Source: Macrostomum lignano (lineage: Eukaryota). Taken from it: 64,000 bases of DNA. Where the stretch lies: positions 1-64,000 of the forward strand of contig NIVC01001278.1 in assembly GCA_002269645.1 (NCBI GenBank). The letters are read 5' to 3'. The position numbers and the translations under genes were made by a program. Of the stretch, positions 3,613 through 54,360 are shown one piece after another (positions within the stretch are counted from its first letter, which is position 1; each line of letters begins with the position of its first letter). Under the pieces are notes generated by a model. That model searched no databases. It worked only from the letters and a program-made list of their open reading frames with translations, and was not told where the DNA came from.

Positions 3613-5915
3613 TCAGGCCAAGACCTTGCTCCGTTCGCGGGTGATGCCCGTCTTGAGCATGTTGCCATCGGTCTGAGTTATCGGCTTGGTTGCTAGGCGG
3701 TTTCTAACGTCGGCCGTGCGCCTATCGAGCATGATTGAGTTGGTCTTCTCGGCCAGGTCAGCGTTGATTCGGTCCAGCTGCTTCTGCAGGCCGTCGAGGT
3801 TGTGCCTGAGGGTTGGAGGCGAGGGTGGAGGGCTTAGAATGATGACGGAGTCGGAGCAGGTAAGATGACTGAGTCGATGAGTTGAGTGCAGGAGAGATGA
3901 CTGAGTCGATTGATTTGAGTGCAGGAGAGATGACTGAGTCGATTGATTTGAGTGCAGGAGAGATGACTGAGTCGATTGATTTGAGTGCAGGAAAGATGAT
4001 TGAGTCGATGGAGTCAGTGTGAATGTATTTACATGTTGTATGTAAATATTTATTTGTGTTTCAAGTCGACTTTATCTTCCAGCTTCTCACCGACATCATT
4101 TATTCGCATTTCCTTTTCATTCTGCCCTGAGCTGCTCAAATCCATCTCAATTTCAAACCCAAACCGGAGCGAGAATAATGATCTACTTGGCTCATCTTTG
4201 GCGAGCAATTTTCGAATCCTGGCGTCTCTCGTCGATAACAGCTGCTGCACTGCGGCTAGAGTTCATGCCTTCCCTCTCTTGCTCGGAGTCACTCTGTCCA
4301 AGCAAGCAATCTACAGTGCTGCTGTGTGCTCATCTTCATTTAGACATTGCTTTCCCCTTTCCGAGAAACTCGAGTTCCTCCCCCCCTCGATCTTCCTCCT
4401 CCCCCCTTCTCTCAAAATGAGTTCAATTTTCTCCTGACTGATCCACTTACCGGACCGGCAGCTCTTTTTAAAGTGCAGGTGAGATTGTGTTTTTTAAATA
4501 ATAATTTGCAACAAATCTACTATTAGTAGCTAAGAAATAGAAGTATAATTAAGGCATACCGAGCCTGCTTGAGCTTGTCGTAGAGAGCGTCTTTGCTGGC
4601 CTTGATCTGCTGCACCTCGTCGGTGAGGCCGTACTGCACCGCGTCTCGGCACAGCTCCACGCCCGGCCGGGTTGTCCGGTTCTCCAGGCGAGTCTCGGCC
4701 AGTTTAGCTGGCGGAATCTTCGCTTTGATTGCCTCCTCCAGGGCGCGAATGTCCCGCTCGAGTTCGGCGATCTCGTCCTCAGTCTGCTGCTTCTGCCACT
4801 CGAGTTCGTCCTTGGCCTGTTCGTGGGATTAAGAGGTCGGGTTTACAATCTTTGACAGAAAAAAATTGGTTGAAGACATTCGGACGAAGAGTTTGGAGAT
4901 AGAGAGTTTGGATGAAAGATTTATGAGATGACTTCAAAGTTTGAGCATTGAACTCAAAGATGATGCAGTGTCGATCCCTCAGCCTGACCTGCTCCTCTTC
5001 GTGCAGTCGCTTCCTCAGCGCGTAGTCGCTGGCCTGCCGCTGGGACTCCAGGTCGTTGTCCGTGTCGTGGATGGTCCGGTGGGCGGCCTCGCGCAGGCGG
5101 CCGCTAGACGCGATCTCAGCCTTGGCCCGGTCCACATTGTACCGGCTGAAGTCCTCCCACTGCTGCGGGGTGGTGCTGCCCTTGGGCACCCGAGTGGGGT
5201 TCGGCTTGTAGGAGATGTTGGGGCTCTGCTCGTTCAGATTGTACTGATCGATGTCGATGCCCAGAGCGATGTTCTTGTTCTGCAGGTCGGCCAGGATCTG
5301 CTGGCGGGCCTCCTGCAGGACGCACAGCTGCTCGAACTGCTCGTCAACTTTCTGCTGAAGATTGCGCTTGGCCTTAGCAATCACCTCTTGCTCCTAGACG
5401 ATAGCAATATGCATTGTAAATAACTCATTCGAGCTACTAACAGTATGTATGTTAGCAAATTATTGATACTTTATCGAGAAAACGGTGAAACCATGACTAA
5501 CCTTGCGCAGCTGATGCTCGATCTCGTCCTCAACGTTATCGATGCTTCGACGTCCGTCACGAACAGTCAGGCACTCGTTGACGGTGTCAGTGGGCAGGTT
5601 CTTGCGCTCCAGAGCCTCCTCGGTCTGCTCCTTGGACTCGCTCAGCTTGGCAATTTCGGCATCAAGGTCGCCCAAAGTCTGCTCGAGGATTTCCTTCCAC
5701 TTGCGGATGACATCGACGCGGTCGGCCAGACGGGTGTTGTTGTCCTTCTGGTCCCATTTGGTCTTGTTGTCGGTCTCGTTGCGCAGGAATCGGGCCTCCT
5801 GGCGCACCTGATCGGAGGCTTCTCGCTGGCGCTCGGCGTTAGACGAAATCGCGTACGCGTTGGTGAACCAGTCCACTGGCTGATACTTGGCGTTTGGCTT
5901 TGTCTCTGTTGCCAT
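3613..5915 (-). CDS. TEKT2: Tektin-2 (tektin B1), 4 exons, 422 aa
   Basis: Exons 5915-5502, 5393-4989, 4816-4560 and 3805-3613 join at GT-AG junctions into 1269 nt ending in TGA. The protein (MATETKPNAKYQPVDWFTNAY...KWDQKDNNTRLADRVDVIRKWK...) has the tektin signature RPGVELCRD and a coiled-coil pattern. The subfamily call is from recalled similarity to TEKT2. Confidence 0.9.
3863..4010. repeat. 33-bp minisatellite in tektin intron 3
   Basis: agatgactgagtcgattgatttgagtgcaggag at 3895, 3928, 3961 and 3994. Confidence 0.88.
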
Positions 5916-6927: not shown

Positions 6928-9900
6928 ATGGTTATCATGTCCTGGAATCCCGATCCAGCAAGCCTAGAACAAGTGGTTATTCTCTTAAACCAATCGAAAA
7001 CAGCAGATTCAGCTGTTCAAAAGCAAGTCCATGAAGTGAGTATTCTTTCCATTTAACTTGATTTATTTTCTAACTTTACTTTAGTAGGCCTAACTGAAAT
7101 TTAAAATCGAAATGTTTTTGCAAATAATTACCTGAAAATAGCTATACAATGATGTTGTATAGTTGTTATTGTCAATATATCTGATCCCGTGTCTATACAT
7201 GTATGTTTACACTATAATAGTCACTCAGGATCAGAAAGCCAGGGCCATATGCCCATATGCCCATAGCCTAGTCAAGAAGATTGCATTTTTATTTTTTTAA
7301 TCAAGCACAAAATTAAGGGTGTTAAGTTCACCAATCGGAGAATTCTAATGCAATCACCAATTTTAATGGTTATTGCCATAGTCAGGAAGGTGGCCTTTGC
7401 CACCAGGATGGAATTCTTGCACAAAAGTTGTTACGTGTTTGTGCGTGCTTGTCAAATTTGTGCGCGCTTGCGCGCTGAAAAGAAGCCTACTTGCGCGCTC
7501 TTAAAGAAGGTGTGTGCGCGCTTGATTATTGTATGCACTGCGTAAGAAGCTGTTTGCCAAAGAATCACAGACAGGATTTGACTTTTACATGCATTCAACC
7601 CATAGTGGCATAGTGTGGATCATGCTAAGTGCACGCGAGAAACAACCCAAAGCTAATTCCCAAAAGCACACCGACGACAAGCAAATGCACGCCGATGCAT
7701 GCCTACATATTTTAAAACATATTTTAAATATGTAAAAATGTATTTTAAATTGCATTGTGTAAAACAAAGCAACAAACGATGTACAAAAGAAATGATATAT
7801 CTTTAAAAACGTGTATTTCTCATACATTAGTTTATTTAACAGTCTTATACACTGTTTATTTACAATAGTTTTTTTCAAAAGCTAAATACAATAATACATA
7901 TTTTATGTTTGCTTACCATTGCATTGGCAGCTTTGCCACATCATGTGCCAGGCACGCGGCGCACGCCAGGCACGCAAGTGTATTTATGTAGTGTGCATTA
8001 TGCATGCCAAATGCATGCCACTTACCTAATCACATGCCGGTGCACGCCACTTTTGAAAATGCACGCGGGAAAATTCTTGCATGCACTACATGATCTACAC
8101 TATGGCATTCAACATGGTTATGTGCCATGTAGGGGTCCCAAATCCTGGACATTTTACAATCCCGGGATCCTAGACAAAAAATTGACCCAATCCCAGGATC
8201 CCGGGCCAATCCCAGGATTGATTGAACAAAAAAATTTATAGGAAGCTTTCTCATTGTCCATAAAACAATTTCTCAACCAATTTGAGCATCATTTAGGGGC
8301 CCATTCCATATAAGATGGACATATTTGGAAAAAAGAAAAAAGTCAATATTTTTGCTTGTCATTGCCTTATCAGCCATTTTTTTACCAAATCTTTTTTGTA
8401 TGTAATGTATACAATCTAAGAAAAAATAAATGATAAAATGTTGGATTAGTATGTTATTAATTGGCAAAAAGTTATTTTTGTAAAAAATTGGACATTTTCT
8501 AAGCAAAAGACATCATTAAGTTTATGTACCTTTTAAAAACAAATAGAAAGCTTTAGAAGGTTAAAACAAACTATATATAAAATTATAGTACTTGCATCAT
8601 CAGATAAAAACATTAGCAACCATATAATCTATTATATTTTTAATATATTAGTACTTCAAAGTTACTGAATTGACAGAAAAAATATGTTACGACCATAATG
8701 TTACGACCATAAGGCTGCTTTTTCTTTTGTATCTTTGTTGCCTTTTTGAGTTTATATATTCTAATAAAAGAGTATGACTTCTAAAGATGTTCTTAGTCAA
8801 ATTTAAAAAAAAAATTATTGCAAAATATCAAAAATGAAAAATTTTATAAGACTTTTATCTTTTAGTTTCTATATGTCAAAAATCCTGTTGTTACGACCAT
8901 AAGTGCCATTCAAGGTTTAATAACATCTATACTAATGATGATATCTATATGAAACTTTATAAACATTTTCTTGACAAAATAATCTTTCATTCAAAATATT
9001 GGTTTAGTATATTCTATTATTAGATTTCATTTTATAAGTAAAAATAGTCTGTCATGTTACGACCACAATTATATGGAATGGCTCTAGGTTTCTAATTTCT
9101 ATTTCTAGCTTATACAAGTAGAACTGCATTGATAAAATAGTTGAAGTTACATGTAGTTGTTAGTTGTACATACACATACACACTAAACTACACCCTCTCC
9201 CCTTGGATTAGGACCATATACGCTGCGCTGGTGCCTCTCTACCCCCAACGGCAACATAGACCACTTCATACACACAGAGACTCAGACTCAGAACCCAGTC
9301 CGCACCCCACCCCCATTTCCCCTTTCCCTTCCTTAGCTGCGTCTGCGCACTGCGGCGGGGCCTGGGCCAGTGGGCCCAGTGTCCAGGCCATTGCCACTTA
9401 GACAGTTAGAGTCTAGACTAGAGTCAGACCCCTTAGTCTAGTGACTAGTAGTGCTTGACACAGTTGAATGAGTTGAATGATAGTCTTACTGTCCTTCATT
9501 CTATAACTTCATTCTCAGGATGCAAAAATTCTCCCAAAACTGTTAAGTGCTAACTGCAAGACAAAACATATTCACTTCTGCAAAGTGTAAATTCCAATCC
9601 CGTGTTTACTAGGATCTCGGACCCCTAATCCCAGGATCCCGGGAATCCCGGGATCTTGGGATCTCGGGATTGGGACCCCTAGTGCCATGTGGTATATGCG
9701 GGCTCAAGTTCTACTTTTCATAGTCCGGAAGATTGTTTTTATGCCGGAAAATTTCAAAACAAAAGTAAAACAAAGAATAATAGTTTTTAGCAAAAAAAGT
9801 TTCTTTAAAATTTAGTAAAACTCTTATAATTTTTTAAGAATATTTTCTTTAAAAAAAATATAGCATTTAAGCTACTTTAAACTTAAAGTACAACTTTTTA

Positions 9901-12900
9901 ATTTACGTCAGCATAGAATTGAAAAACTAGAAATTTCATTTTTTGCTGCATGGGCCATGATCTGCATCATGACTTATTTTAATAGCTAGTGTGCGCACTT
10001 GCACGCTGCTCCAAAAACATGCGCGCATTTTTCCTACTATCAAGCAAGAATTCCATCCTGGCTTTGCCATGGAAAATTCAGGTGCACACAAGGGGTCTTT
10101 AGTGCACAATCATGGTGCACACTGAGGTCCCTGGCACATGCGGCACATAATCATGATGCACACTGAGGTCCCTAGCGCATGCGGCACATAATTGCAGTGC
10201 ATGCGGTGCATAAGGTCTTCGACATATGCGGTGCTATGCACAACTTGGTATATAAGGAATCAGAATAGAATCTTTATTAGCATAAAACTGGCATAGCATA
10301 TTGAGTCTGCATGAATTCTAAGAATTTTGTAAATTTGTTGTAAAATACATAAAATAAGGGCATAGACATGGCGCATAGCATACAAATGGCACATAGATGG
10401 CGCACAGATTGTCCCAAAAAATTTATTCCAGCGCACACTGTGCCACCTTCCTGACTATGGGATTATTGTGATATATTCTAGTAAATATCTCAGTTTAGTT
10501 AAAATATAAAAAATTCTTATGTGAGAATTAGTGTTGTACTAGTAGTGAATATATTTTAGGCTAAGTGCAACCTAGAAAAACTTGGAATTAAGAGGGGCTC
10601 ATAGAAAAAACTAGAGATTAAGCAAAATATAATTTTTATTTATCAAAGCAATATTATAGTTTTGTAATGTTTTTAAAATATTTAGTGACATTAATAATTG
10701 AATGTCACTAAATTAAACAATTGAATTTGATATTTATGCAATAATGTATAAAACATTTTAAAGTTGATTTTCTATATCATGTTTGGCTATTTATAAGATA
10801 GGTATAAATATTCATGTTTGTTTTATATTATTAATTAGTTGTATTCCATAATCTCCTAGATATGTTGGCTGTACAGAACTATTTTTCAGCTACCATGGAA
10901 GTTGTGCATGACCAGCAAGTTATGCTTTACATGTAGTGGTCTATGAGATGTTGCTATATTAAAGGACCTTTTTTGCAGTTGCAACAATAAAGGACCTTTT
11001 TGCAATTGTAACAATTATATTTATTACACATATATGATACGATATTCTTTAGAGTAATTTATAATCATTTAGACATTATATCAATTTCATCAAATACATT
11101 ATTCAGCAAGACTAACATTCAAAAACAATGAATCAAATTTGCAATGCCATTAATGGAATTAATACATATACAAAGAAAAATTGTTCTGAGATATAATTTT
11201 TGCCTTGCATTTATAGAACTTTATCATAGAATTTTTTAAAATAAACAGTTTACCAAAACAAAAAAATGTATATTTACTATATCATAAAATTATTAAACTT
11301 TTTTGAAATAGAAAAATATTTACTTTATTAGGAAAACAAAAAATATATCTATGTTAACAACTGTTCATTCAGTTTAATTGATTTTCTATTTGGTTGTGAT
11401 TGATAAGCTGCACTATCAATTGTTTCTCATTACATTGCTGCATACTGCATGTGGCATGCCAATGCCACACAATGGACACAATTTGTTGTGCCCACTAAGT
11501 GCGCAACTACATGTTGATAGAAATGTTGGCAATATAAATATTCAAAAGCCTATCCACATGGGAGTTTTCACCAAAAAAGGAATCTACAACCCTATTAACT
11601 ATACTCTTTTCTACCTATAGGCACCTAGATGAAAATATTATAAAAATCTTAAAAAACCTTGACTTAAAAAATATGTGAATACCTTATTCTATTCATAAAT
11701 TAATATCCTTTGTCCATAGATGTCACTTTTGTCATTATTACTTTTATTGTTATGATTATATTTAAAATTATATTAGCACTACTCTATCAAGTTACTTTAC
11801 TTATAATGAAGAGAATAATAGTATATTATCTTCATTTACATAAATTCTAACTTTTAAATATTTGTGTAGAACAAAAAGCAATAGTGCTTAAAAGTATAAA
11901 ATACTAATATATAAAAAAACAAAAAGTAAAGTAGTATAGATTTTTTGTAAAAATTGCTTCTTTTAAGTTATGCCAAGTCAAAATAATATTTATTCTTATA
12001 TAAAAACTACATTCATATTGTATCTCATATATAATTTTTATTTTAGAAACTCAATGACTTAAATCAGATTCCTGACTTTAACAATTATTTGGCATTCATT
12101 CTTCAGTTGCCAACACAAGGTAATTTTCTATTATAATTGTTCAATACCTTTGATATATATTATTAGTGGGGTAGATAGAGTTAGGATTATGTATATACTA
12201 TAAGATGTTCTATCATTCAATAGTTACCGGGAAAAGAGTGTGTTTTCAAGAATTAAAAAAAGTCTTGACACTTGGTTTTTCAATAATTTATGAATGAGGC
12301 TTTCAGAATTTAGAATTGGGATTTTCAAAGATCTGGGTATTGGATTTTAAGATTTTAGAATTGTGATTTTAAGGATTCGGGCTTGGGATTTTAAGGATTA
12401 GGGCTTGGGATTTTAAGGATTAGGGCCTAGGATTTTAAGGATTAGGGACTGAGATTTTAAGGATTAGGGCTTGGGATTTTAAGGATTAGGGCTTGGGACA
12501 TAAATGCGCAACCTTGGGAATCCCTCGGCCGTTTCTATTGGCAACACACATATGTAAGTCGCTATTGGACGGAATAGTACTCACGTGACTGCTCTCCGCC
12601 AATAGCGACTTACATGTGTGTGTTGCCAATAGAAACAGCCGGGTGAATCCCTAGGTTGCGCCCAAGCATGGCTTGGGATTTTAAGGATTAGGGCCTAGGA
12701 TTTTAAGGATTAGGGCTTGGGATTTTAAGGATTAGGGCCTAGGATTTTAAGGATTAGGGCTTGGGATTTTAAGGATTAGGGCCTAGGATTTTAAGGATTA
12801 GGGCTTGGGATTTTAAGGATTAGGGCCTGGGATTTTAAGGATTAGGGACTGAGATTTTAAGGATTAGGGCCTAGGATTTTAAAGATTAGGGACTGAGATT

Positions 12901-15900
12901 TTAAGGATTAGGGCTTGGGATTTTAAGGATTAGGGCCTGGGATTTTAAAGAGTTGGGAATGGGATTTTAAGGATTAGGGACTGAGATTTTAAAGATTAGG
13001 GCCTGGGATTTTAAGGATTAAGGCCTAAGATTTTAAGGTTTAGGGCCTGGGATTTTAAGGAGTTGGGAATGGGATTTTAAAGATTTGGGAATGGGGGTTT
13101 TAAGGATTTGGGATTTGAGTTTTAAGTTTAAAGGATAAAAATGATTATGAACTGGCACCTTGAATCCAATTGCCCATCCAGATGAGACCAACCGCTCTAT
13201 GGCCGGCCTTATCCTGAAGAACAACATCAAGAATCACTACCAGCTCTATCCTGCCGAAGTGCTGGAATGCGTCAAGCGAGCCTGTCTTGCCTGTCTTGGC
13301 GACCGCTCCGCAATGATCCGGGCCACTGTTGGCACTATCATCACCACCATGGTGTCCAAGGCCCGGCTCGAGGCATGGCCCGAGCTCATGCCTCATCTGG
13401 TTGCTAGCCTAGACTCCGGAGACGAATTCTTAGTCGAAGGTTCGTTCAGCGCTATGCACAAAATTTGTGAAGATTCCAAACAGCTGCTGGAGGATACGCC
13501 CGTGTCGCAGCCGCTTGGCATTCTTATACCGAAGTTTATCGAGTTTACTGGGCATCGCAATGCGAAGGTGAGCATCTTTCTGTAGTTTTGGGAGGGGATC
13601 TCAGCTCACCGGTGATACCTGTTGTCTCGACCTTCACTCACCGGTGATACCTGCTGTCTCACCGGTGATACCTGTTGTCTCGACCTTCACTCACCGGTGA
13701 TTCCTGCTGTCTCACCGGTGATACCTGTTGTCTCGACCTTCACTCACCGGTGATTCCTGCTGTCTCACCGGTGATACCTGTTGTCTCGATCTTTACTGCT
13801 GGTGATACCTGTTGTCTCGATCTTCACACACTGGTAGTACCTGTTGTCTCAATCTTCACTCACCGGTAATACCCATTGTCTCGATTTTCACTCACCAGTG
13901 ATACCTGTTGTCTCGATCTTGACTCACCGGTAATACCCATTGTCTCGATTTTCACTCACCAGTGATACCTGTTGTCTCGATCTTCACTCATCAGTAATAC
14001 CTGTTGTCTCGATCTTCACTCATCAGTAATACCTGTTGTCTCGATCTTCACTCATCAGTAATACCTGTTGTCTCGATCTTCACTCATCAGTAATACCTGT
14101 TGTCTCGATCTTCACTCATCAGTAATACCTGTTGTCTCGATCTTCACTCATCAGTAATACCTGTTGTCTTGATCTTGACTCACCGGTAATACCTGTTGTC
14201 TCGATCTTGACTCGCCAGTAATACCTGTTGACTCGATCTTCACTCACTGATAATTCCTGTGCTATTCTCTTAACTTGACTCACAGGTAATACCTCCCCTC
14301 TCCATCTTGTCAACCCCAATTCCAGGTTCGCTCCCTGGCCCTAGGCTGCATCAACCAGTTCATCGGCGGTCACTCCCAGGCGCCTATGCAATATCTGGAC
14401 CGCCTATTGGAAAGCGTGTTCCGTTTAGCTGAGGATACAGACACCGAGGTGCGCAAACAGGTCTGCTCGTCACTGGTGCTGCTAGTGGACTCTCGTATGG
14501 GCTACCTGCTGCCCTATATGACCAGCATACTAGAGTTCATGCTGCTCAGGACTCAGGATCCCGACGAGTTTGTAGCTCAGGAGGCATGCGAACTCTGGCT
14601 TGCCATTGCTGATCAGGTAGGCTCTCGGTTTAATTATGACCCCGTGTCCTTTGTTTTATGACCCCATGTGTTCAGCTCTATGACCCGTGTACCCAGTCTA
14701 TGACCCGTGTCCCCAGTCTGTGACCCCGTGTCCCCAGTCTATGAGCCCGTGTCCCGTCTATGACCCCGTGTACCCAGTCTATGATCCCGTGTCCCCCGTC
14801 TATGACCCCGTGTCCCCAGTCTATGACCCCGTGTCCCCGTCTATGACCCTTGCCCCCAGTCTATGAGCCCGTGTCCCCCGTCTATGACCCCGTGTACCCA
14901 GTCTATGACCCCGTGTACCCAGTCTATGACCCTTGCCCCTAGTCTATGACCCCGTGTCCCCAGTCTATGAGCCCGTGTCCCGTATATGACCCCGTGTACC
15001 CAGTCTATGATCCCGTGTCCCCCGTCCATGACCCCGTGTCCCCAGTCTATGACCCCGTGTCCCCGTCTATGACCCTTGCCCCAGTCTATGAGCCCGTGCC
15101 CCCCGTCTATGACCCCGTGTACCCAGTCTATGACCCTTGCCCCCAATCTATGACCCCGTGTACCTAGTCTATGACCCCGTGTACCTAGTCTATGACCCCG
15201 TGTACCCAGTCTGTGACCCCGTGTACCCAGTCTATCACCACGTGTCCCCTGTCTATGAGCCCGTGTCCCCCGTCTATGACCCCGTTTACCCAGTCTATGA
15301 CCCTTGCCCCCAGTCTATGACCCCGTGTCCCCAGTCTATGACCCCGTGTCCCCGTCTATGACCCTTGCCCCCAGTCTATGAGCCTGTGTACCCAGTCTAT
15401 GACCCTTGCCCCAAGTCTATGACCCCGTGTACCTAGTCTATGACCCCGTGTACCCAGTCTATGACCACGTGTCCCCAGTCTATGAGCCCGTGTCCCCCGT
15501 CTATGACCCCGTTTACCCAGTCTATGACCCTTGCCCCCAGTCTATGACCCCGTGTCCCCCGTCTATGACCCTTGCCCCCAGTCTATGACCCCGTGCCCCA
15601 GGTCTATGACCCGTGTACCCAGTCTATGACCTTGTGTCTTTAATCTTGAGCCTGCAAAGCTGACTCCGCGCCAACGCATTGATTTCAGCCCAATTGTCAG
15701 GAGCTGCTGCGGCCCTACCTGCCAAAGCTGATCCCGGTGCTCTGCCGCGGCATGAAGTACTCAGAAAGCGACGCCGAGGCGCTAGAATTGGAGAATCGCG
15801 AGGACGCGCACATCCCAGATCGCGAGAGCGACATCCGGCCTCGGTTTCACAGGACCCGGTCGAAGACGGCTTCCCAGCATCTGCACGACTGCGCAGCGGG

Positions 15901-18900
15901 TGGCGGCGGCGCATCCGGCGAAGATGCCGACGCCTCAGGCGGGCTGGAGCAGCAGCAGCAGGATCTGCTGTTGCTGGCCGAGTCTGGCGACGCTGACGAT
16001 TCTGGCGGTGGCGGAGACGACATTCTGAGCAGCTGGAATCTCAGGAAGTGCTCAGCGGCCGCCCTGGATGTTCTAGCTAATGTGTTCCGCGACGAGCTGC
16101 TTGAGCACCTGCTGCCCATTCTCAAGGACACGCTGCTCAGCGAACGCTGGGATGTCAAGGAGTCTGGCATACTCATCCTTGGCGCAGTGGCCGAAGGCTG
16201 CCTTCAAGGCGTCACGGCCTACCTGCCGGAACTGTTCAGGCTGCTGCTCACCTGTCTGCAGCACGCCAAGCCTCTGGTCCGCTCCATCACCTGTTGGACT
16301 CTGTCCCGCTATGCTCACTGGATTGTGACTCAACCGCACGAGCTGTGCCTGAAGCCGCTGCTATACGAATTGCTCAATAGAATTCTGGACACTAATAAAC
16401 GAGTTCAAGAGGCCGCCTGTTCCGCGTTCGCCACGCTAGAAGAGGAAACGTGCAGCGATCTGGTGCCCTACCTGGGCGATATTGTGCAGACTTTGGTGTT
16501 CGCTTTTCAGCGATATCAGCATAAGAACTTGCTCATACTGTACGATGCCATCGGCACACTGGCTGACTCTGTTGGCTCCCATCTCAACCAGGAGGCATTC
16601 GTTCAGCTATTGATGCCCAGGCTGTTCCAAAAATGGGAGAGTCTTAACGACGATGACAAAGACCTGTTCCCGTTGCTGGAGTGCTTGAGTAGCTTGGCCA
16701 CAGCTCTTGGTGTTGGCTTCCTGCCCTACTGCGGGCCCGTGTTCGCGTGAGTAATCGTTCTGTTTATTGTTTTTTGATATTTAGGGAGTTTTATCCTGCC
16801 CTCTCATCAACTGTCTCCCCCTGTTCTCATTAACTGTCTCACCCTGTTCTCATCAACTGTCTCACCCTGTTCTCATCATCTGTCTCACCCTGTTCTCATC
16901 AACTGTCTCACCCTGTTCTCATCATCTGTCTCACCCTGTTCTCATCATCTGTCTCACCCTGTTCTCATCATCTGTCTCACCCTGTTCTTATCAACTGTCT
17001 CACCCTGTTCTCATCAACTGTCTCACCCTGTTCTCATCAACTGTCTCACCCTGTTCTCATCATCTGTCTCACCCTGTTCTCATCAACTGTCTCACCCTGT
17101 TCTCATCATCTGTCTAGGGGGATAGGGAGTGACACTGGGAGATAGGGAGGGACACTGGGAGATAGGGAGTGATACTGGGAGATAGGGAATGACACTGGGA
17201 GATAGGGAGTGATACTGGGAGATAGGGAGTGATACTGGGAGATAGGGAATGACACTGGGAGATAGGGAGTGATACTGGGAGATAGGGAATGACACTGGGA
17301 GATAGGGAGTGATACTGGGAGATAGGGAGTGATACTGGGAGATAGGGAGTGATACTGGGAGATAGGGAGGGACACTGGGAGATAGGTAATGACACTGGGA
17401 GATAGGGAGTGATACTGGGAGATAGGGAGGGACACTGGGAGATAGGTAATGACACTGGGAGATAGGGAGTGATACTGGGAGATAGGGAGGGACACTGGGA
17501 GATAGGGAGGGACACTGGGAGATAGGGAATGACACTGGGAGATAGGGAGTGATACTGGGAGATAGGGAGGGACACTGGGAGATAGGTAATGACACTGGGA
17601 GATAGGGAGTGATACTGGGAGATAGGGAGTGATACTGGGAGATAGGGAGGGACACTGGGAGATAGGGAGTGATACTGGGAGATAGGGAGTGATACTGGGA
17701 GATAGGGAGTGACACTGGGAGATAGGGAGTGACACTGGGAGATAGGGAGTGATACTGGGAGATAGGGAGTGATACTGGGAGATAGGGAGTGACAATGGGA
17801 GATAGGGAGTGATACTGGGAGATAGGGAGTGACACTGGGAGATAGGGAGTGACACTGGGAGATAGGGAGTGATACTGGGAGATAGGGAGTGACAATGGGA
17901 GATAGGGAGTGATACTGGGAGATAGGGAATGACACTGGGAGATAGGGAGTGACACTGGGAGATAGGGAGTGATACTGGGAGATAGGGAGTGATACTGGGA
18001 GATAGGGAGTGATACTGGGAGATAGGGAGTGATACTGGGAGATAGGGAATGACACTGGGAGATAGGGAGTGATACTGGGAGATAGGGAGTGATACTGGGA
18101 GATAGGGAGTGACAATGGGAGATAGGGAGTGATACTGGGAGATAGGGAGTGATACTGGGAGATAGGGAGTGATACTGGGAGATAGGGAGTGATACTGGGA
18201 GATAGGGAATGACACTGGGAGATAGGGAGTGATACTGGGAGATAGGGAGTGATACTGGGAGATAGGGAGTGACAATGGGAGATAGGGAGTGATACTGGGA
18301 GATAGGGAGTGATACTGGGAGATAGGGAGTGATACTGGGAGATAGGGAGTGATACTGGGAGATAGGGAGTGATACTGGGAGATAGGGAGTGACACTGGGA
18401 GATAGGTAATGACACTGGGAGATAGGGAGGGACACTGGGAGATAGGGAGTGATACTGGGAGATAGGGAGTGATACTGGGAGATAGGGAGTGACAATGGGA
18501 GATATGAGGGATACTGGGAGATAGGGAGGGACACTGGGAGATAGGGAGGGACACTGGGAGATAGGGAGTGATACTGGGAGATAGGGAGTGATACTGGGAG
18601 ATAGGGAGGGACACTGGGAGATAGGAGGGACAATGGGAGATAGGGAGGGACACTGGGAGATAGGGAGGGACACTGGGAGATAGGGAGTGGCACTGGGAGA
18701 TAGGAGGGACACTGGGAGATAGGGAGGGACACTGGGAGATAGGGAGGGACACTGGGAGATAGGGAGGACACTGGGAGATAGGGAGGGACACTGGGAGATA
18801 GGGAGGGACACTGGGAGATAGGGAGGGACACTGGGAGATAGGTAGTGGCACTGGGAGATAGGAGGGACACTGGGAGATAGGGAGGGACACTGGGAGATAG

Positions 18901-21900
18901 GGAGGGACACTGGGAGATAGGGAGGGACACTGGGAGATAGGGAGGGACACTGGGAGATAGGGAGGGACACTGGGAGATAGAAGGGACACTGGAAGAAGAG
19001 TTCACGACAGAAAAAATGACAGGATAGGCTTTGAAGGACAGGATAAACATGAAGGCTTTGAATGCTTGCTTACAATGGGACTATTTGAGTGGGTGTTCAG
19101 CCAAAGCACTCTTTGAATTAACTACTCAGTTTTAATTGCCCCATATCTCTAAAAAAGGGACATCTCAATACAGTAATGGATTTTGGGCGGAGCAGTTCTC
19201 AATATTCCTCAACTCCCCCGCTCTTTTTCTTTATCTATCCATTTTCTTGCCAAATCTAGTCTAAAAGTGCATGCCTTATTGTCCCGTCTCTTGCTCGCAG
19301 ATGAGGCCCGAACGAGTTTTTGGACTGGGAGGGGGTTATCCTCGCCGGGGAGAGGATTAATTTGAATTCGATATTCGCTATGTTGCCTTAAATCCCTTCG
19401 CCCCGCCGTCCCGCTTCGGCTTGTTCGATCCCCCTTGGGCTGGGGTGTGTTGCAGGGGAAAAGTTGTGCATTTTCGAGTTGGCTTAGGCCTGTCCGGTAT
19501 GCACTTTGTCTCTGACAAATATTGATCAAATACACGCCTTTTTATGCGCCCAATAAATTATTTAATACGTACTGCGCCTAGTGACAACTTGGCACACTTG
19601 TGAGCCCGCTCTTGCAATTGACTCAACTTGGAGGCACGCCAAGCCTTCATTCCTGGCTTGCTCTTTGTTCGGTTAAAGCAAATAGATCGTGCAAGACCAC
19701 TCGGATCTCAGAATTTTGATCCCTAGATCTGGAGATCCCAGAATTATGATCCCCAAATCATGAGGTCCCAGAGTTATAATCCTCGAATCATAAAATCCCA
19801 TAATAATGATCCCCAAATCATGGGATCTCAGAATCATGATTCCCAAATCATTAAGTGTCATAATAATAATCCCCAATTCTCGAGATCCCAGAATTATTAT
19901 CCTCGAGTCATGAGATCCCAGAATTAGAATCCCCAAATCATGAGATCCCAGAATTATGATCCTCAAATCGTCAGATCTCAGAATCATGATCCCCAAATCA
20001 TAAAATGCCATAATAATGATCCCCAAATCATAAAGTCCCATAATAATGATCCCCAAATCTCGAGATCCCAGATTTATTATCCCCAAATCTCGAGATCCCA
20101 GATTTATTATCCCCAAATCACGAGATCCCAAAATTATGATCCTCAAATCTTGATATACCAGAAGTATGAATCGAAATTAACCTTAAATTTCTATAATTAT
20201 GATACCAAATGGATCCTCAAATCCCAAGAATCATGATCCCTAAATCACACAAGTATCGCTCACTAATCCTAGCTAATTCTCCCCGAAATCCCCACCCTGT
20301 CTTTTAGCCGTTGCGTCCGCCTGGTTGAGACCACCCTGCGCCAGCAGCAGCTGCACTTCCAGAACCCGGAAGCAAACGAAGCGCCAGACAAAGATTTCAT
20401 GATAGTCAGCCTGGACTTGCTCAGCGGAGTTGCCGAAGGCCTGGGCTCGGAGATTCAGCCACTGGTGCAGGGCTCGCCAATTCTAGACCTGCTCTACCAC
20501 TGCATGCAGGACTCGCAACCCATTGTCAGGCAGAGCGCCTTCGCACTGCTCGGCGATCTTAGCAAGGCCTGCTTTGATCAGCTGCGACCGGCTGTTGGCA
20601 ATTTTCTAATGGTGCTGGCCGCTAATCTTAATCCAGTTAATATCAGCGTATGCAATAATGCTATCTGGGCTATCGGCGAGATCTCCATTCGATTGGGTTT
20701 GTACTCTTGTGCTGCTAATTCGTCTGAAATTTATCCCCAAATCACCTGATCCCATTGTCATGATCCCTAAATCCTCAGATCCCATTGTTATGATCCCTAA
20801 ATCAGCTGATCCGATTGTTATGATCCCCAAATCCTCAGATCCCATTGTTATGATTCCCAAATCCTCAGATCCCATTGATATGATTCCCAAATCCTCAGAT
20901 CCCATTGATATGATCCCCAAATCACCTGATCCCATTGTCATGATCCCTAAATCCTCAGATCCCATTGTTATGATCCCTAAATCCTCAGATCCCATTGTTA
21001 TGATCCCCAAATCCTCAGATCCCATTGTTATGATACCAAAATCCTCAGATCCCATTGTTATGATTCCCAAATCCTCAGATCCCATTGTTATGATCCCCAA
21101 ATCCTCAGATCCCATTGTTATGATACCAAAATCCTCAGATCCCATTGTTATGATCCCCAAATCCTCAGATCCCATTGTTATGATTCCCAAATCCTCAGAT
21201 CCCATTGTTATGATACCAAAATCAGCTGATCCCATTGTTATGATCCCCAAATCACCTGATCCCATTGTCATGATCCCTAAATCCTCAGATCCCATTGTTA
21301 TGATCCCTAAATCCTCAGATCCCATTGTTATGATCCCCAAATCCTCAGATCCCATTGTTATGATACCAAAATCCTCAGATCCCATTGTTATGATTCCCAA
21401 ATCCTCAGATCCCATTGTTATGATCCCCAAATCCTCAGATCCCATTGTTATGATACCAAAATCCTCAGATCCCATTGTTATGATCCCCAAATCCTCAGAT
21501 CCCATTGTTATGATTCCCAAATCCTCAGATCCCATTGTTATGATACCAAAATCAGCTGATCCCATTGTTATGATCCCCAAATCACCTGATCCCATTGTCA
21601 TGATCCCTAAATCCTCAGATCCCATTGTTATGATCCCCAAATCCTCAGATCCCATTGTTATGATACCAAAATCCTCATATCCCATTGTTATGATCCCCAA
21701 ATCCTCAGATCCCATTGTTATGATACCAAATCCTCAGATCCCATTGTTATGATACCAAAATCCTCATATCCCATTGTTATGATCCCCAAATCCTCAGATC
21801 CCATTGTTATGATCCCCAAATCCTCAGATCCCATTGTTATGATACCAAAATCCTCAGATCCCATTGTTATGATACCAAAATCCTCATATCCCATTGTTAT

Positions 21901-24900
21901 GATCCCCAAATCCTCAGATCCCATTGTTATGATCCCCAAATCCTCAGATCCCATTGTTATGATACCAAAATCCTCATATCCCATTGTTATGATCCCCAAA
22001 TCCTCAGATCCCATTGTTATGATACCAAAATCCTCAGATCCCATTGTTATGATTCCCAAATCCTCAGATCCCATTGATATGATCCCCAAATCCTCAGATC
22101 CCATTGTTATGATCCCCAAATCACCTGATTACATTGTTATGATTCCAGCTCACCTGATCCCATTTGATTTCTATGATCCCTAAATCCTCAGATCTTATTG
22201 TTATGATCCCCAAATCACCTGATCTCATTGTTATGATCCCAAAATCACCTGACTTCATTATCAAAATCCCCAGATCCTATTTCTATGACTCCCAACTCAC
22301 TTGATCCCATTGTTATGATCCCCAAATCAGATTTTATTCCCTAACTGTCCTGGTCTTCTCGGTAATCCTGATAGCCTAAAAACTATAAACATCCCTTAAA
22401 CCCGAACCGCTCCCAATCTAAGGCTCGGAAATCAAGCCGTACGTGGAGAAGATCATAGACCCGCTGACTGACATCATTAACCGCACCAATACGCCCAAGA
22501 CTCTGCAGGAGAATACGGGTGAGCTGGTTGCCAACTTAAATAATTGGCAAATTTGTCTGCGGTAGGAAGGTGTACTGTACTTTTATTTATATTCATTATT
22601 TTGTCTGCCAATATTTCTGACGCTACCAAATGAGAACAAGTCCAACCTCTGTCTGTTCTGTTGTAGTAGTATTTAATGAGGCCAACTAAGTGGTGGCATT
22701 ATTGTCTGCTTATTACTCAACCCACTAATTGTCCCGTTTAATTAGTTATTTGTTTTTATTACCTTTTGGTGTGTCTCTGTCGTCTCTCTCTCTCGCTCTT
22801 CAACTCGCTGTCTGTCAACTTATATACACAACATATCGGCGTCTTCCCTCACTCCGAGTCGCTAACTGTCTGTGAACTTATCTACACTACATATCGGCGT
22901 TTTCTCTCACTTCGAATCGCTATCTGTAAAGTTGTCTACACTACATATCGGCGTTTTCTCTCACTCCGAATCGCTATCTGTAAAGTTATCTACACTACAT
23001 ATCGGCGACTTCTCTCACTCCAAATCGCTAACCATCTGTAAAGCTGTCTACACTACATATCGGCGACTTCAATCACTCCAAATCGCTGTTTGTAAACTTA
23101 TCTACACAACATATTGGCAACGTCTTTCTCGCTTCTTCGACTCTCTGTCTGTAAAGTTATCTACTCTACATATCGGCAACGTCGAAACCAATGTATCTGC
23201 TCCAGTTATATATTTAAATATGTTATATAATTATATATACGCTCGTAATTACACAAAAACTACATAAATTCTCTCTACGAGCAGCACTTTTCATTCGTTA
23301 CTTGATTCATAATTGTATAGTATTTTTCATGAGAAATATTTAGATATACTACTGCTTAATCTAGTAGTAAAGTATATTTAATAAAACTTGTGTCTATTAT
23401 TTATTGTAAATTTAAATTTATATACAGTTTATTTTTACATGATACGAATACAATGTACATACCTGTCATTATCCCATCAATTTTCTATTGTAGCGATCAC
23501 TATTGGCCGGTTGGGTCTCGTCTGTCCGATGGAAGTTGCCCCCTACATGTCCAGATTTCTTAGACAATGGTACTTAATTGCTCTCTTAATTGTGCTTTGC
23601 TTTCAACCATTGTGTTTTATATTTGATAGTGTGTCTCTCTATATTGTGCTTTGTTTATAAAGCTTTTGCATTACATTCATGAGGGAATAGAATGGATTGC
23701 TAATCTAGCCAGAATCATTGATGAGGGAATAGAATGGATTGCTAATCTAGCCAACATCACTGATGAAGGAATAGAATGGATTGCTAATCTAGCCAACATC
23801 ACTGATGAAGGAATAGAATGGATTGCTAATCTAGCCAACATCACTGATGAAGAAATAGAATGGATTGCTAACCTAGCCAGCATCACTGATGAAGGAATAG
23901 AATGGATTGCTAATCTAGCCAGCATCACTGATGAAGGAATAGAATGGATTGCTAATCTAGCCAACATCACTGATGAAGGAATAGAATGGATTGCTAATCT
24001 AGACAACATCACTGATGAAGGAATATAATGGATTGCTAATCTAGCCAGCATCACTGATGAAGGAATAGAATGGATTGCTAATCTAGCCAATATCACTGAT
24101 GAAGGAAAAGAATGGATTGCTAATCTAGCCAGCATCACTGATGAAAGAATAGAATGGATTGCTAATCTAGCCAACATCACTGATGAAGGAATAGAATGGA
24201 TTGGTAATCTAGCCAGAATCACGGATGAAGGAATAGAATGGATTGCTAATCTAGCCAGCATCACTGATGAAGGAATAGAATGGATCGCTAATCTAGCCAA
24301 CATCACTGATGAAGGAATAGAATGGATTGCTAGTCTAGCCAACATTACTGATGAAGGAATAGAATGGATTGCTAGTCTAGCCAACATTACTGATGAACGA
24401 ATAGAATGGATTGCTAATCTAGCCAACATTACTGATGAACGAATAGAATGGATTGCTAGTCTAGCCAACATCACTGATGAACGAATAGAATGGATTGCTA
24501 GTCTAGCCAACATCACTGATGAACGAATAGAATGGATTGCTAGTCTAGCCAACATTACTGATGAACGAATAGAATGGATTGCTAATCTAGCCAACATTAC
24601 TGATGAACGAATAGAATGGATTGCTAGTCTAGCCAACATCACTGATGAACGAATAGAATGGATTGCTAGTCTAGCCAACATCACTGATGAACGAATAGAA
24701 TGGATTGCTAGTCTAGCCAACATCATAATTAGAAGAGTAAAATGGATCGCTAATCTAGCCCAAATACTGATGAAGGGATAGATCCATAGATATATCTAGT
24801 CTCATGAAATTGTTATTATTATTATTTTGCCTGCTGTCCAGTATATTTTCGTCACTTCATCTTAGCATTCGCAAATAATTACTAACAGTAGCTTATAGAT

Positions 24901-26153: not shown

Positions 26154-26922
26154 GGATAGAATGGATTGCTAATCTAGCCAAAATCACTGATGAAGGAATA
26201 GAATGGATTGCTAATCTAGCCAACATCACTGATGAAGGATAGAATGGATTGCTAATCTAGCCAAAATCACTGATGAAGGAATAGAATGGATTGCTAATCT
26301 AGCCAACATCACTGATGAAGGATAGAATGGATTGCTAATCTAGCCAAAATCACTGTTGAAGGAATAGAATGGATTGCTAATCTAGCCAAAATCACTGATG
26401 AAGGAATAGAATGGATTGCTAATCTAGCCAACATCACTGATGAAGGAATAGAATGGATTGCTAATCTAGCCAAAATCACTGATGAAGGAATAGAATGGAT
26501 TGCTAATCTAGCCAACATCATAGTTGAAGGAATAGAATGGATTGCTAATCTAGCCAACATCACTGATGAAGGAATAGAATGGATTGCTAATCTAGCCAAC
26601 ATCATAATTGAATTAATAGAATGGATTGCTAATCTAGCCAACATCATAATTGAATTAATAGAATGGATTGCTAATCTAGCCAACATCATAATTGAATGAA
26701 CAGAATGGATTGCTAATCTAGCCAACATCATAGTTGAATTAATAGAATGGATTGCTAATCTAGCCAACATCATAATTGAATGAACAGAATGGATTGCTAA
26801 TCTAGCCAACATCATAGTTGAAGGAATAGAATGGATTGCTAATCTAGCCAACATCATAATTGAATGAACAGAATGGATTGCTAATCTAGCCAACATCATA
26901 TTGAAAGAATAGAATGGATTGC
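26154..26922. repeat. 42-bp minisatellite family, copy 2 (just after the transportin stop)
   Basis: Same unit as 23668-24785, about 18 units. Confidence 0.95.
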
Positions 26923-33679: not shown

Positions 33680-34097
<418 letters not shown>

Positions 34098-45870: not shown

Positions 45871-46733
45871 ACACGCCTCATCGCTAGAATGACAACATCA
45901 GCTGTTACTTATATCAAAGTTCGTACGCAAAAAACAACATGCAAATTGGATGCCCAGTTTTTAACTGTCAATCTACACAAAATATTCGTTGACAATGGGC
46001 CCAAAATTTAACTTTATATTAATAAGATTTTTAGACGACAAAAACACAAACAAATGGAAACTTTGCTCTCGCCAACAACAGGTGCGCCTCATTTCACGCA
46101 AAGGCAAAAAATTATCTTTCTATTTTAAATTGACTGACACCCCAGTCCGCAGCAGCCTGATCTGCTGGGTTTCCCATAGTTGCTGGGCAATTTTTCAACT
46201 TGATTATCCCACTGGGGACTGTCTTCGTATCATTCCCACATCGTCTGCGTACTCTGGAGGCCTTTTTCCCCAACCGATTCCCATTTTAAAAGTTAATTAA
46301 TTTTCACCCAGTTTTAACTTCGAACAGGCAAAAAAGGAATGGCAGAGAGGATGCGACAGGCGGGACTTGGTGGGGGCCGATCCGCCAATTCCGGCGCACT
46401 CATGCGGAGTCAGGCTCTGGGGAGCTTTTGTTGGGAAAATAATCCCTTGCAGAGACATGCGCAACTCAAAGAGTTGTTTTTGCTCACCTACGGACGCAGC
46501 GCTCGCGCCTCGGGTGACAAAGGAAATGCTAGTTGTCTCTGGCGCCATCTCGTGACTGATAAATTTATTAATTTGACTTTGCAAACAATATCCGAGGTGA
46601 GCGAGCGCTGTGGGCTTTTCTATAAGTTGATTGATGGAGTCGGCACCTGAGACAGCATCGTTCTCAGCGGTTTAGCATTGGGACTTTTTCCCATCTTGGC
46701 AAGGTGAACTGGCAGAATTTAACGGAATTTTGC

Positions 46734-47080
<347 letters not shown>

Positions 47081-49002: not shown

Positions 49003-49196
49003 AAGGATTGCTAATCTAGCCAACGTCACTGATGAAGGAATAGAATGGATTGCTAATCTAGCCAACATCACTGATGAAGGAATAGAATGGATTGCTAATC
49101 TAGCCAACATCACTGACAAAGGATTAGAATGGATTGCTAATCTAGCCAACATCATAATTGAAGAATAGAATGGATTGCTTATCTAGCCAACATCAT
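49003..49196. repeat. 42-bp minisatellite family, copy 3 (upstream of FoxC)
   Basis: Same unit as 23668-24785, about 4.5 units. Confidence 0.92.

Positions 49197-49881: not shown

Positions 49882-54360
<4,479 letters not shown>

What the first reader, a model, noticed from the sequence alone, without database searches (positions are those of the whole stretch)
7368..10468. Four-level nest of DNA transposons in transportin intron 1
Seen: A (7376-10460, 19-bp TIR, TSD ggttattg/gattattg) contains B (7403-10061, 18-bp TIR, perfect TSD ctttgcca). B contains C (8130-9681, TAGGGGTCCC TIR, perfect TSD gtgccatg). C contains D (8297-9084, CCATTCCATATAA inverted core, tag/tag flanks). B landed immediately inside A's left TIR. 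Removing the inserts leaves A about 420 bp and B about 1.1 kb. Established: 8-bp TSDs typify hAT and P superfamilies, and 3-bp TSDs typify PIF/Harbinger. The CCA termini of A and B fit neither canonical hAT (YAG) nor P (CAT) ends, so they may be unclassified families. The nest gives a relative chronology A<B<C<D and suggests an insertion hotspot.
Basis: partly seen in the sequence, partly recalled or inferred. Interest (0 to 1): 0.7.

Follow-up and report, generated by a model that had tools for sequence, protein, structure and literature searches.

The report
Nested non-autonomous DNA transposons in intron
The first intron of an animal transportin gene holds a pile-up of at least four, probably five, small dead-end "cut-and-paste" transposons inserted into one another; this is a real but ordinary kind of genomic fossil.

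Summary
Elements A (7376-10460), B (7403-10061) and C (8130-9681) each have perfect terminal inverted repeats (TIRs) of 19, 18 and 12 nt and 8-bp target-site duplications (TSDs), far beyond chance.

It has a perfect TSD (CATTCAAC) and a TIR of about 32 nt, and it lies inside B beside C. The nest is therefore A > B > {E, C > D}, and empty B is 585 bp, not 1.1 kb.

D (8297-9084) is the weak link. Its 13-nt inverted core plus TAG/TAGG flank arises in 9-26% of shuffled regions. Its best support is a 14-nt motif found four times in the window, only inside D.

None of the elements encodes a protein. C is hAT-like (TAGGG terminus, close to a published hAT TIR). A, B and E share 5'-CCA...TGG-3' ends, 8-bp TSDs and subterminal TGCRCRC clusters, and they fail the hAT terminal motif; their superfamily is unresolved.

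The nest fills 62% of transportin intron 1 (7036-12046), about 440 bp from the start codon. I found no other copies in the window or in the searchable collections, which hold almost no animal DNA. So family status, copy number and the hotspot idea remain untested.

Nested MITEs are well documented. Interest is low.

The parts
7368..7375 (.). Left TSD of A (GGTTATTG). The right copy is GATTATTG at 10461-10468, 7/8 identical.
7376..10460 (.). Element A, 3085 bp as found and 418 bp with its inserts removed (7376-7402 plus 10070-10460). It has a perfect 19-nt TIR, CCATAGTCAGGAAGGTGGC. Its interior carries GTGCACAC/GGCGCAYAG motif clusters and a 41-bp unit repeated 2.1 times at 10108-10192.
   Evidence: (I2).
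7395..7402 (.). Left TSD of B (CTTTGCCA). It begins directly after A's left TIR. The right copy is at 10062-10069 and is identical.
7403..10061 (.). Element B, 2659 bp as found and 585 bp empty (7403-7599, 8114-8129 and 9690-10061). It has a perfect 18-nt TIR, CCAGGATGGAATTCTTGC. TGCGCGC-type motifs cluster near both ends.
   Evidence: (I5, D6, D12, D20).
7600..8105 (.). Its perfect 8-bp TSD CATTCAAC lies at 7592-7599 and 8106-8113. The TIR starts CCATAGTG, extends to about 32 nt (28/31), and has an 8-nt tandem duplication in the left arm. E shares the terminal heptamer CCATAGT with A. It also shares a 13-mer with A, GTGGCAYAGTGTG, 12/13 matching.
   Evidence: (I9).
8130..9681 (.). Element C, 1552 bp as found and 761 bp empty. 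The TIR is TAGGGGTCCCAA(A)TCC. The perfect 8-bp TSD GTGCCATG lies at 8122-8129 and 9682-9689. AATCCCAGGATCCCGGG-type repeats sit near both ends. It is a hAT-like non-autonomous element.
   Evidence: (D1, I23-I25).
8297..9084 (.). Candidate element D, 788 bp, 24% G+C. Its inverted ends are GGGCCCATTCCATATAA and GAGCCATTCCATATAA, with a 13-nt perfect core at 8301-8313 and 9069-9081. It is flanked by TAG (8294-8296 and 9085-9087); the alternative reading is TAGG with the element starting at 8298. It contains four direct copies of TGTTACGACCAYAA, at 8685, 8699, 8889 and 9055. It is not statistically secure.
7261..7292 (+). x1, a solo sequence resembling A's terminus (CCATAG[CCTAG]TCAAGAAGATTGC...). 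It lies in host intron sequence 85 bp upstream of A and has no inverted partner. It may be a remnant of an older element of the A family.
   Evidence: (D7).
9718..9755 (+). x2, an internal sequence in B's right arm that resembles A's left end over about 37 nt (CATAGTCCGGAAGATTG...TGCC..GGAAAATT). It has no inverted partner. It is either a truncated A-family insertion or a captured fragment.
7036..12046 (+). Host context: intron 1 of a transportin (TNPO1-like) gene, 5011 bp, running GTGAGT...TTTTAG. Exon 1 is 6928-7035 and exon 2 is 12047-12119. The nest, counting A with one copy of its TSD, is 3093 bp, or 62% of the intron. The remaining intron sequence is 25.5% G+C.

Best explanation
The region is a fossil pile-up of small non-autonomous (MITE-like) cut-and-paste DNA transposons. 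Each was mobilised in trans by a transposase encoded elsewhere in the genome. That enzyme bound the terminal inverted repeats and subterminal motif clusters, excised the element, and re-inserted it at a staggered cut. Repair of the cut produced the flanking direct repeat, which is 8 bp for A, B, E and C.

Order of events:
- A inserted into transportin intron 1, about 440 bp downstream of the start codon.
- B inserted into A at the first base inside A's left TIR.
- E and C inserted independently into B, 16 bp apart. Their relative order is unknown.
- D, if it is real, inserted into C.

Classification:
- C belongs to, or lies close to, the hAT superfamily.
- A, B and E form a related group defined by 5'-CCA...TGG-3' ends, 8-bp TSDs and TGCRCRC subterminal repeats. 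Their superfamily cannot be assigned from this window.
- A and E are the closest pair, sharing the terminus CCATAGT.

The nest has no demonstrated function. B separates A's left TIR from the rest of A by 2.7 kb, and the inserts in B and C enlarge those elements several-fold. These interruptions probably reduced or ended their mobility.

What is shown and what is inferred: the TIR/TSD anatomy, the containment order, the lack of coding capacity and the intron position are shown. Trans-mobilisation, loss of mobility and any target preference are inferred.
For: - TIR and TSD geometry read directly from the sequence.
- Only these elements pass a whole-window TIR+TSD scan. Shuffles give 0.15 hits per window, and no shuffled hit has an arm score above 23, against 29-37 observed.
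- The TIR strings are unique in the window.
- No ORF of 50 aa or more in the nest has a Pfam hit. The longest ORF, 110 aa, crosses element junctions.
- Empty sizes are 418, 585, 506, 761 and 788 bp.
- TGCRCRC occurs at 7-15 per kb in A0, B0 and E, against 0.58 per kb in the window. These three elements hold 17 of the window's 37 occurrences, mostly near their ends.
- C's terminus TAGGG fits the hAT motif YARNG. Its TIR resembles the published hAT-HT2_AC TIR CAGGGGTCCCCAAAC (PMC3014272).
- Only A, the outermost element, has a decayed TSD (7/8). This is consistent with A being the oldest.
- Nested MITE 'multimers' formed by independent insertions are documented in rice, maize and mosquito (PMC5172404).
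Against: - No second copy of any element was found, so none has been shown to be a repeat family. The window self-BLAST found nothing.
- Exact-TIR scans of metagenome, prokaryote-genome and viral collections gave only single hits of 18-25 bp, at the chance rate. Those collections hold almost no animal DNA, so this is absence of a test rather than a negative result.
- D's ends are within reach of chance, and its flank is not the canonical TWA.
- No autonomous partner or DNA transposase lies in the 64-kb window.
Confidence: 0.9

Rival explanations
1. D is not a transposon. The segment 8297-9084 is simply part of C's internal sequence, and the CCATTCCATATAA inverted pair and TAG flanks are coincidental. 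The nest then has three levels.
For: - A perfect inverted repeat of at least 13 nt with a nearby TSD of at least 3 bp (or at least 4 bp) occurs in 26% (or 9%) of shuffled 6.2-kb regions.
- Another 13-nt inverted pair (6888 and 8845) exists in the same AT-rich region.
- D's G+C content (24%) matches the host intron (25.5%), and there is no sharp change of composition at its edges.
- TAG is not the TTA/TAA of PIF/Harbinger.
Against: - The inverted similarity extends beyond the core. Outward it is GGGCC against GAGCC, and inward about 6/9.
- A 14-nt motif occurs four times in the window, only inside D, and one copy abuts the right TIR. The chance expectation is 0.38, and 0 of 100 shuffles reach four copies. 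This marks the segment as a distinct structured unit.
Confidence: 0.3
2. A, B and E are atypical members of the hAT superfamily. They would be moved by a hAT-type transposase despite having CCA rather than YAG ends. They are not a separate or unclassified group.
For: - They have 8-bp TSDs, short TIRs of 18-32 nt, and clusters of short subterminal repeats, all typical of hAT (8-bp TSD given as a hAT feature in PMC3014272).
- By common practice MITEs are assigned to superfamilies from TSD and TIR alone (PMC5199201).
- B's terminal heptamer CCAGGAT is also the repeated subterminal motif of the hAT-like element C.
Against: - The terminal pentamers CCATA and CCAGG fail YARNG at position 2. In CCATA position 3 also fails.
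- Shifting the boundary by one base to obtain CAT or CAG destroys the TSD match in all three elements (read).
- Every hAT TIR shown in the passages of the Anolis table read here starts CAG, CAR or TAG.
Confidence: 0.35
3. The clustering reflects where insertions are tolerated, not where they are aimed. Insertions into existing junk inside a promoter-proximal intron are neutral and are kept, while insertions elsewhere in the intron or the gene are removed by selection. There is then no true hotspot.
For: - Under uniform insertion within the intron, the chance of complete nesting is only modestly small, about 0.015-0.027. This is computed from the sizes and the intron length.
- Solo A-like termini x1 and x2 show that other insertions did occur nearby and then decayed.
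Against: - All the TIR/TSD elements detectable in the 64-kb window lie in this one 3.1-kb stretch, although the window has many other introns.
- B landed exactly at the inner edge of A's TIR, and C and E lie 16 bp apart. This hints at local targeting.
- MITEs are reported to preferentially target other MITEs (PMC5172404).
Confidence: 0.45
4. The inverted and direct repeats are chance or an assembly artefact, and there are no transposons here.
For: No second copy of any element could be found with the available collections.
Against: - There are four independent pairs of perfect or near-perfect TIRs. Each is flanked by its own 8-bp direct repeat in strictly nested, non-overlapping geometry.
- Shuffles give 0.15 weak hits per window, and none approaches the observed arm scores.
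- My estimates of the chance expectation for A and B are below 1e-6 per window.
Confidence: 0.02

Closest known systems
Non-autonomous hAT elements of the Charlie/hAT-HT type (for example hAT-HT2N1-3_AC of Anolis, TIR CAGGGGTCCYCAAACT, 8-bp TSD)
   Same: Element C has an 8-bp TSD, a terminal pentamer TAGGG that fits YARNG, and a short TIR. The TIR TAGGGGTCCCAAATCC matches the published TIR at 9 of the first 11 positions. C also has subterminal short repeats, no ORF, and an empty size of 761 bp, within the range of those families (780-1485 bp).
   Different: There are two mismatches in positions 1-11, whereas Repbase's rule for same-superfamily annotation allows one (PMC4455052). C's TSD GTGCCATG does not resemble the NTCTAGAN preference of those families. 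No transposase or other copies are available to test kinship.
Nested MITE multimers (Jiang and Wessler 2001, as reviewed in PMC5172404)
   Same: Several small non-autonomous TIR elements are inserted into one another by independent events, each with its own TSD. They lie in a genic, non-coding position, and elements of related families sit within each other (E inside B inside A).
   Different: The documented cases are mainly Tourist/Stowaway elements (TA or TWA TSDs) in plants and mosquito. Here the TSDs are 8 bp and the host is an unidentified animal. Depth is 3-4 levels at a single locus, and no genome-wide frequency is available.
P superfamily and other superfamilies with 8-bp TSDs (Merlin, MULE, Novosib, Zisupton)
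   Same: The TSD length of A, B and E (8 bp), the short TIRs, and the internal or subterminal repeat motifs.
   Different: As I recall from Yuan and Wessler 2011, which could not be opened here, the termini are CANRG for P, GG... for Merlin and GRG... for MULE. None of these starts with CCA. I could not retrieve terminal sequences for Novosib or Zisupton.
PIF/Harbinger-derived Tourist-like MITEs (for example mPing)
   Same: D has a G+C-rich start to its TIR (GGGCC or GGCCC), a TIR of about 16 nt, a short 3-4 bp flanking repeat, an AT-rich body and a size below 800 bp.
   Different: The flank is TAG or TAGG rather than TTA/TAA. D's TIR has an indel or two mismatches. D itself is not statistically secure.

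Membership tests
hAT superfamily (element C) | 8-bp target-site duplication | tested here: met
   GTGCCATG at 8122-8129 and 9682-9689, perfect.
hAT superfamily (element C) | Terminal motif YARNG (PMC3014272) | tested here: met
   Both ends read TAGGG.
hAT superfamily (element C) | Repbase rule for non-autonomous elements: same TSD length and termini aligned over positions 1-11 with at most 1 mismatch to a classified element (PMC4455052) | tested here: not met
   TAGGGGTCCCA against CAGGGGTCCCC (hAT-HT2_AC) has 2 mismatches in 11. Only the TIRs printed in one paper were compared; Repbase and Dfam were not available.
hAT superfamily (element C) | Mobilised by a hAT (BED/hATC) transposase; an autonomous relative with the same ends exists | not testable with these tools
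hAT superfamily (elements A, B, E) | 8-bp target-site duplication | tested here: met
   A 7/8; B and E 8/8.
hAT superfamily (elements A, B, E) | Terminal motif YARNG | tested here: not met
   The termini are CCATA (A, E) and CCAGG (B). A one-base shift of the boundary breaks the TSD in all three.
P superfamily (elements A, B, E) | 7-8 bp TSD and CANRG/CAT termini (the terminal motif is recalled from memory and was not verified in a held paper) | tested here: not met
   The TSD length fits (P has 7-8 bp TSDs, PMC5199201). The termini start CC, not CA.
PIF/Harbinger (element D) | 3-bp TSD of TTA/TAA (TWA) | tested here: not met
   The flanks are TAG / TAG, or TAGG / TAGG. The TTA/TAA requirement is from PMC3014272.
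PIF/Harbinger (element D) | TIRs of 14-25 bp | tested here: inconclusive
   There is a 13-nt perfect core. It extends to 16-17 nt with either two mismatches or one mismatch plus one indel. This is within reach of chance in the AT-rich region.
MITE (all five elements) | Small size (under about 800 bp), TIRs, TSD, no coding capacity | tested here: met
   Empty sizes are 418, 585, 506, 761 and 788 bp. ORFs are short and have no Pfam hits. The definition is from PMC5199201.
MITE (all five elements) | Multiple copies in the genome with high identity among family members | not testable with these tools
   No other copy lies in the 64-kb window. Exact-TIR scans of the metagenome, prokaryote and viral collections gave only chance-level single hits.
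Nested MITE multimer | Each inner element is bounded by its own TSD, made from sequence of the outer element, showing independent insertion events | tested here: met
   The TSDs of B, E and C each lie within the next outer element, and the intervals are strictly nested.

The most novel reading that the evidence does not exclude
A, B and E, together with the solo ends x1 and x2, may represent a lineage of cut-and-paste transposons that is not yet classified. Its marks would be invariant 5'-CCA...TGG-3' termini, 8-bp TSDs and TGCRCRC subterminal binding-site clusters. Its autonomous partner would fall outside hAT and P, or form a deep atypical branch of one of them. This lineage would also preferentially insert into or beside ends of its own kind near promoters.
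Probability: 0.12. Interest if true: 0.4.

Novelty: new member of a known kind. Interest (0 to 1): 0.2.

Why it matters
The main value is for annotation. About 62% of transportin intron 1 is transposon debris, and the nest gives a clean relative chronology of at least four insertions.

It also supplies five reconstructed 'empty' consensus seeds (418-788 bp). These could be used to define families and find autonomous partners in the source genome.

If the CCA-ended group proved to have its own transposase lineage, it would add a small piece to DNA-transposon classification. If genome-wide data showed self-targeting or promoter-proximal targeting, it would extend the plant and mosquito observation of MITE-into-MITE insertion to another animal.

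Nothing here suggests a function for the host.

Tried and rejected
1. Other copies in the window. A self-BLASTN with word size 9 found none, and TIR searches allowing up to 3 mismatches found none.
2. Copies elsewhere.
   - A's 18-mer TIR gave 37 single hits in metagenome contigs. BLASTN shows none extends past 18-25 bp, so these are chance matches.
   - B's TIR gave 11 single hits in unrelated bacterial genomes and none in viral contigs. A's TIR gave one chance hit in viral contigs.
   - These collections are essentially non-animal, so the result is uninformative.
3. Literature string search for the TIRs. Only CAGGGGTCCC, a hAT TIR in Anolis, was useful.
4. Retrieving the table of superfamily terminal motifs. 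Yuan and Wessler 2011 and Bao et al. 2009 are not held. Searches for YARNG, CANRG and GGNRM returned noise. Other reviews lacked terminal sequences.
5. Identifying the organism.
   - The best transportin relative is only 75% identical.
   - The best relative of the Gypsy RT is 53% identical, in a clam-symbiont MAG record that is probably host contamination.
   - The source genome is not in the protein collection. The organism remains 'an animal'.
6. Rfam and tRNA scans of the nest found nothing above threshold.
7. Alternative boundaries. Moving the ends of A, B or E in by one base, to give hAT-like CAG or P-like CAT ends with a 9-bp TSD, fails because the flanks no longer match.
8. Reading A's TIR plus B's TIR as one long composite TIR is rejected. 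At the right end the two are separated by 372 bp, and the 8-mer between them is direct, not inverted.
9. Inverted partners for the A-like solo ends x1 and x2 were not found. Pairing x2 with A's right TIR would cross B's well-supported boundary, so it is rejected.
10. The hAT TSD consensus patterns nTnnnnAn and nnnTAnnn, recalled from memory, cannot be judged from single copies.

Full report
**Observation.**
- A (7376-10460) has a perfect 19-nt TIR, CCATAGTCAGGAAGGTGGC. It is flanked by GGTTATTG and GATTATTG.
- B (7403-10061) has a perfect 18-nt TIR, CCAGGATGGAATTCTTGC, and a perfect TSD, CTTTGCCA. The left copy of that TSD starts on the base after A's TIR.
- C (8130-9681) has the TIR TAGGGGTCCCAA, perfect over 12 nt, and a perfect TSD, GTGCCATG.
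- D (8297-9084) has the inverted core CCATTCCATATAA and TAG on both sides.

**Significance.**
- A window-wide scan for a perfect 8-bp TSD plus at least 12/14 ungapped TIR matches finds only B and C.
- With an 8-nt perfect terminal inverted repeat and at most one TSD mismatch, the scan finds A, B, C, a new element E and two weak hits. Shuffles give about 3.5 such hits, so that loose criterion alone is not enough.
- Requiring a perfect TSD and scoring 60-nt arm alignments separates signal from noise. B, E and C score 36, 37 and 29. In 150 composition-preserving shuffles there are 0.15 hits per window, and none scores above 23.
- A's and B's TIR strings occur nowhere else in the window with up to 3 mismatches.

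**A fifth element.**
- It has a perfect TSD, CATTCAAC, at 7592-7599 and 8106-8113.
- Its arms align over about 32 nt (28/31) once an 8-nt tandem duplication in the left arm is allowed (CCATAGTG|GCATAGTG).
- E lies inside B. Its right end is 16 bp from the left copy of C's TSD.
- The structure is therefore A > B > {E, C > D}. The order of E and C cannot be told.
- With inserts removed, the sizes are A 418, B 585 (not 1.1 kb), E 506, C 761 and D 788 bp.

**D is the weak link.**
- A perfect inverted pair of at least 13 nt with a TSD of at least 3 bp (or at least 4 bp) within a few bases occurs in 26% (or 9%) of shuffled 6.2-kb regions.
- Another 13-nt pair without a TSD exists in the same AT-rich stretch.
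- The boundary is ambiguous: TAG with an indel in the TIR, or TAGG with two mismatches.
- D's G+C content (24%) equals that of the host intron (25.5%).
- In D's favour, TGTTACGACCAYAA occurs four times in the window, all inside D and all on one strand. The last copy abuts the right inverted end. The chance expectation is 0.38.
- I put D at roughly 0.65-0.7 as a real element.

**What the elements are.**
- No ORF of 50 aa or more in the nest has a Pfam match, and the longest (110 aa) crosses element junctions. All five are therefore non-autonomous and MITE-sized.
- C fits hAT. It has an 8-bp TSD and the terminal pentamer TAGGG, which matches YARNG. Its TIR is close to the published hAT-HT2_AC TIR CAGGGGTCCCCAAAC (PMC3014272). 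It has two mismatches in positions 1-11, one more than Repbase's rule allows (PMC4455052).
- A, B and E end in 5'-CCA...TGG-3'. Their pentamers, CCATA and CCAGG, fail YARNG. Moving the boundary in by one base breaks the TSD in all three, so the CCA end is real.
- These three elements also share an architecture. The heptamer TGCRCRC, counted on either strand, occurs at 7-15 per kb in them against 0.58 per kb in the window. They hold 17 of the window's 37 occurrences, mostly near their ends. I defined this motif after seeing the data.
- A and E share the terminal heptamer CCATAGT and a 12/13 match, GTGGCAYAGTGTG.
- Two further sequences resembling A's terminus have no inverted partner. x1 (7261-7292) lies in host intron sequence upstream of A. 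x2 (9718-9755) lies inside B. They suggest older or truncated insertions of the same group.
- I could not assign A, B and E to a superfamily. hAT fails on the terminal motif. P fails as well, judged against the terminal motif I recall. I could not retrieve terminal sequences for Novosib or Zisupton.

**Host context.**
- Exon 1 runs from the ATG at 6928 to 7035 and is followed by GTGAGT. Exon 2 starts at 12047 after TTTTAG. The IBN_N domain is confirmed in exon 3.
- Intron 1 is 5011 bp, and the nest with one TSD copy (3093 bp) is 62% of it.
- A tektin gene lies head-to-head with transportin, with its ATG at 5915 on the minus strand. The nest is therefore within about 0.5-1.5 kb of two start codons.
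- The organism could not be identified. The best transportin relative is 75% identical and the best Gypsy RT relative is 53% identical.

**Mechanism.**
- The anatomy is that of sequential cut-and-paste insertions. Each inner element is bounded by a TSD made from the sequence of the next outer element. This part is shown.
- Mobilisation in trans by transposases encoded elsewhere is inferred. So is recognition of the TIR and subterminal motifs.
- It is also inferred that interruption reduced or ended the mobility of A, B and C.
- The A-first order is consistent with A alone having a decayed TSD. This is weak evidence.

**Hotspot claim.**
- If insertions fell uniformly within the intron, the chance that each later insertion landed inside an existing element is 0.178 x 0.344 x 0.442 x 0.544, about 0.015, or 0.027 without D.
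- All the TIR/TSD elements detectable in the 64-kb window lie in this one stretch.
- B landed exactly at the inner edge of A's TIR.
- This is suggestive. It is equally compatible with selective tolerance of insertions into pre-existing junk, or with promoter-proximal open chromatin. A known preference of several DNA transposons for such chromatin is my recollection and was not tested here.
- Nested MITE multimers and MITE-into-MITE preference are already documented (PMC5172404).

**Searches elsewhere.**
- Exact-TIR scans of metagenome, prokaryotic-genome and viral contigs returned only single matches of 18-25 bp, at the chance rate.
- Rfam and tRNA scans found nothing real in the nest.

**Verdict.** This is a real, well-delimited nest of at least four, probably five, non-autonomous DNA transposons in transportin intron 1. 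One is hAT-like and three belong to a CCA-ended group of unresolved superfamily. The phenomenon is ordinary and already known in kind, so interest is low. The only open point of some interest is the classification of the CCA-ended group.

Noticed in passing
window 12531-12636: A 106-bp near-perfect hairpin with perfect 20-nt and 17-nt inverted blocks lies in transportin intron 2. It sits between two minisatellite arrays with related 22-bp units (12301-12498 and 12670-13112). Rfam gives only sub-threshold generic miRNA-hairpin matches (mir-249, 32.8 bits against a gathering score of 70). It could be a foldback or MITE-like element.
   Followed up: partly
window 7261-7292 and 9718-9755: Two solo sequences resemble A's terminus, both in the same orientation. 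One lies in host intron sequence 85 bp upstream of A. The other lies inside B and resembles A's left end over about 37 nt. Neither has an inverted partner. They are probably remnants of further A-family insertions.
   Followed up: partly
window 7395-7402, 8122-8129, 8190-8220, 9628-9640: The TSDs of B (CTTTGCCA) and C (GTGCCATG) share the pentamer TGCCA. B's terminal heptamer CCAGGAT is also the repeated subterminal motif of the hAT-like element C. This may be coincidence or a hint of related binding sites.
   Followed up: no
window 23679-24782, 26156-26922, 49005-49195: The same 42-bp minisatellite unit (…GGAATAGAATGGATTGCTAATCTAGCCAACATCACTG…) forms arrays at three separate places, two in transportin introns and one upstream of the forkhead gene. 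This suggests a dispersed repeat that carries an internal minisatellite.
   Followed up: no
whole window (for example 14635-15638, 17117-18996, 20733-22246, 36646-37850, 38571-41340, 44693-45872): The window has an exceptional minisatellite load: 54 TRF rows. Arrays of 18-45-bp units and up to 2.8 kb fill most transportin introns and the intergenic space. There are also four tetranucleotide arrays (TCTA, CTAT, TATC, TGTC) of 86-150 copies at 967-1455, 33681-34095, 46735-47078 and 54980-55578.
   Followed up: no
window 56830-60980: ORFs of a Ty3/Gypsy-type LTR retroelement are present: a zinc-knuckle gag, RVT_1, Integrase_H2C2 and the integrase C-terminal domain. They are split over several reading frames. 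The closest RT in the protein collection is 53% identical. It is filed under a lucinid-clam symbiont MAG and is probably host contamination of that record.
   Followed up: partly
window 49834-50526 and 52129-52716: A FoxC-like forkhead gene has its forkhead domain split into Pfam profile positions 2-34 and 34-87. The intervening intron of about 1.7 kb is filled with 21-26-bp minisatellites. Long poly-Q and poly-A tracts flank the domain.
   Followed up: partly
window 4779-5915 (minus strand) and 6928 (plus strand): A tektin gene and the transportin gene lie head-to-head with their start codons about 1 kb apart. This implies a shared bidirectional promoter region just upstream of the nest.
   Followed up: partly
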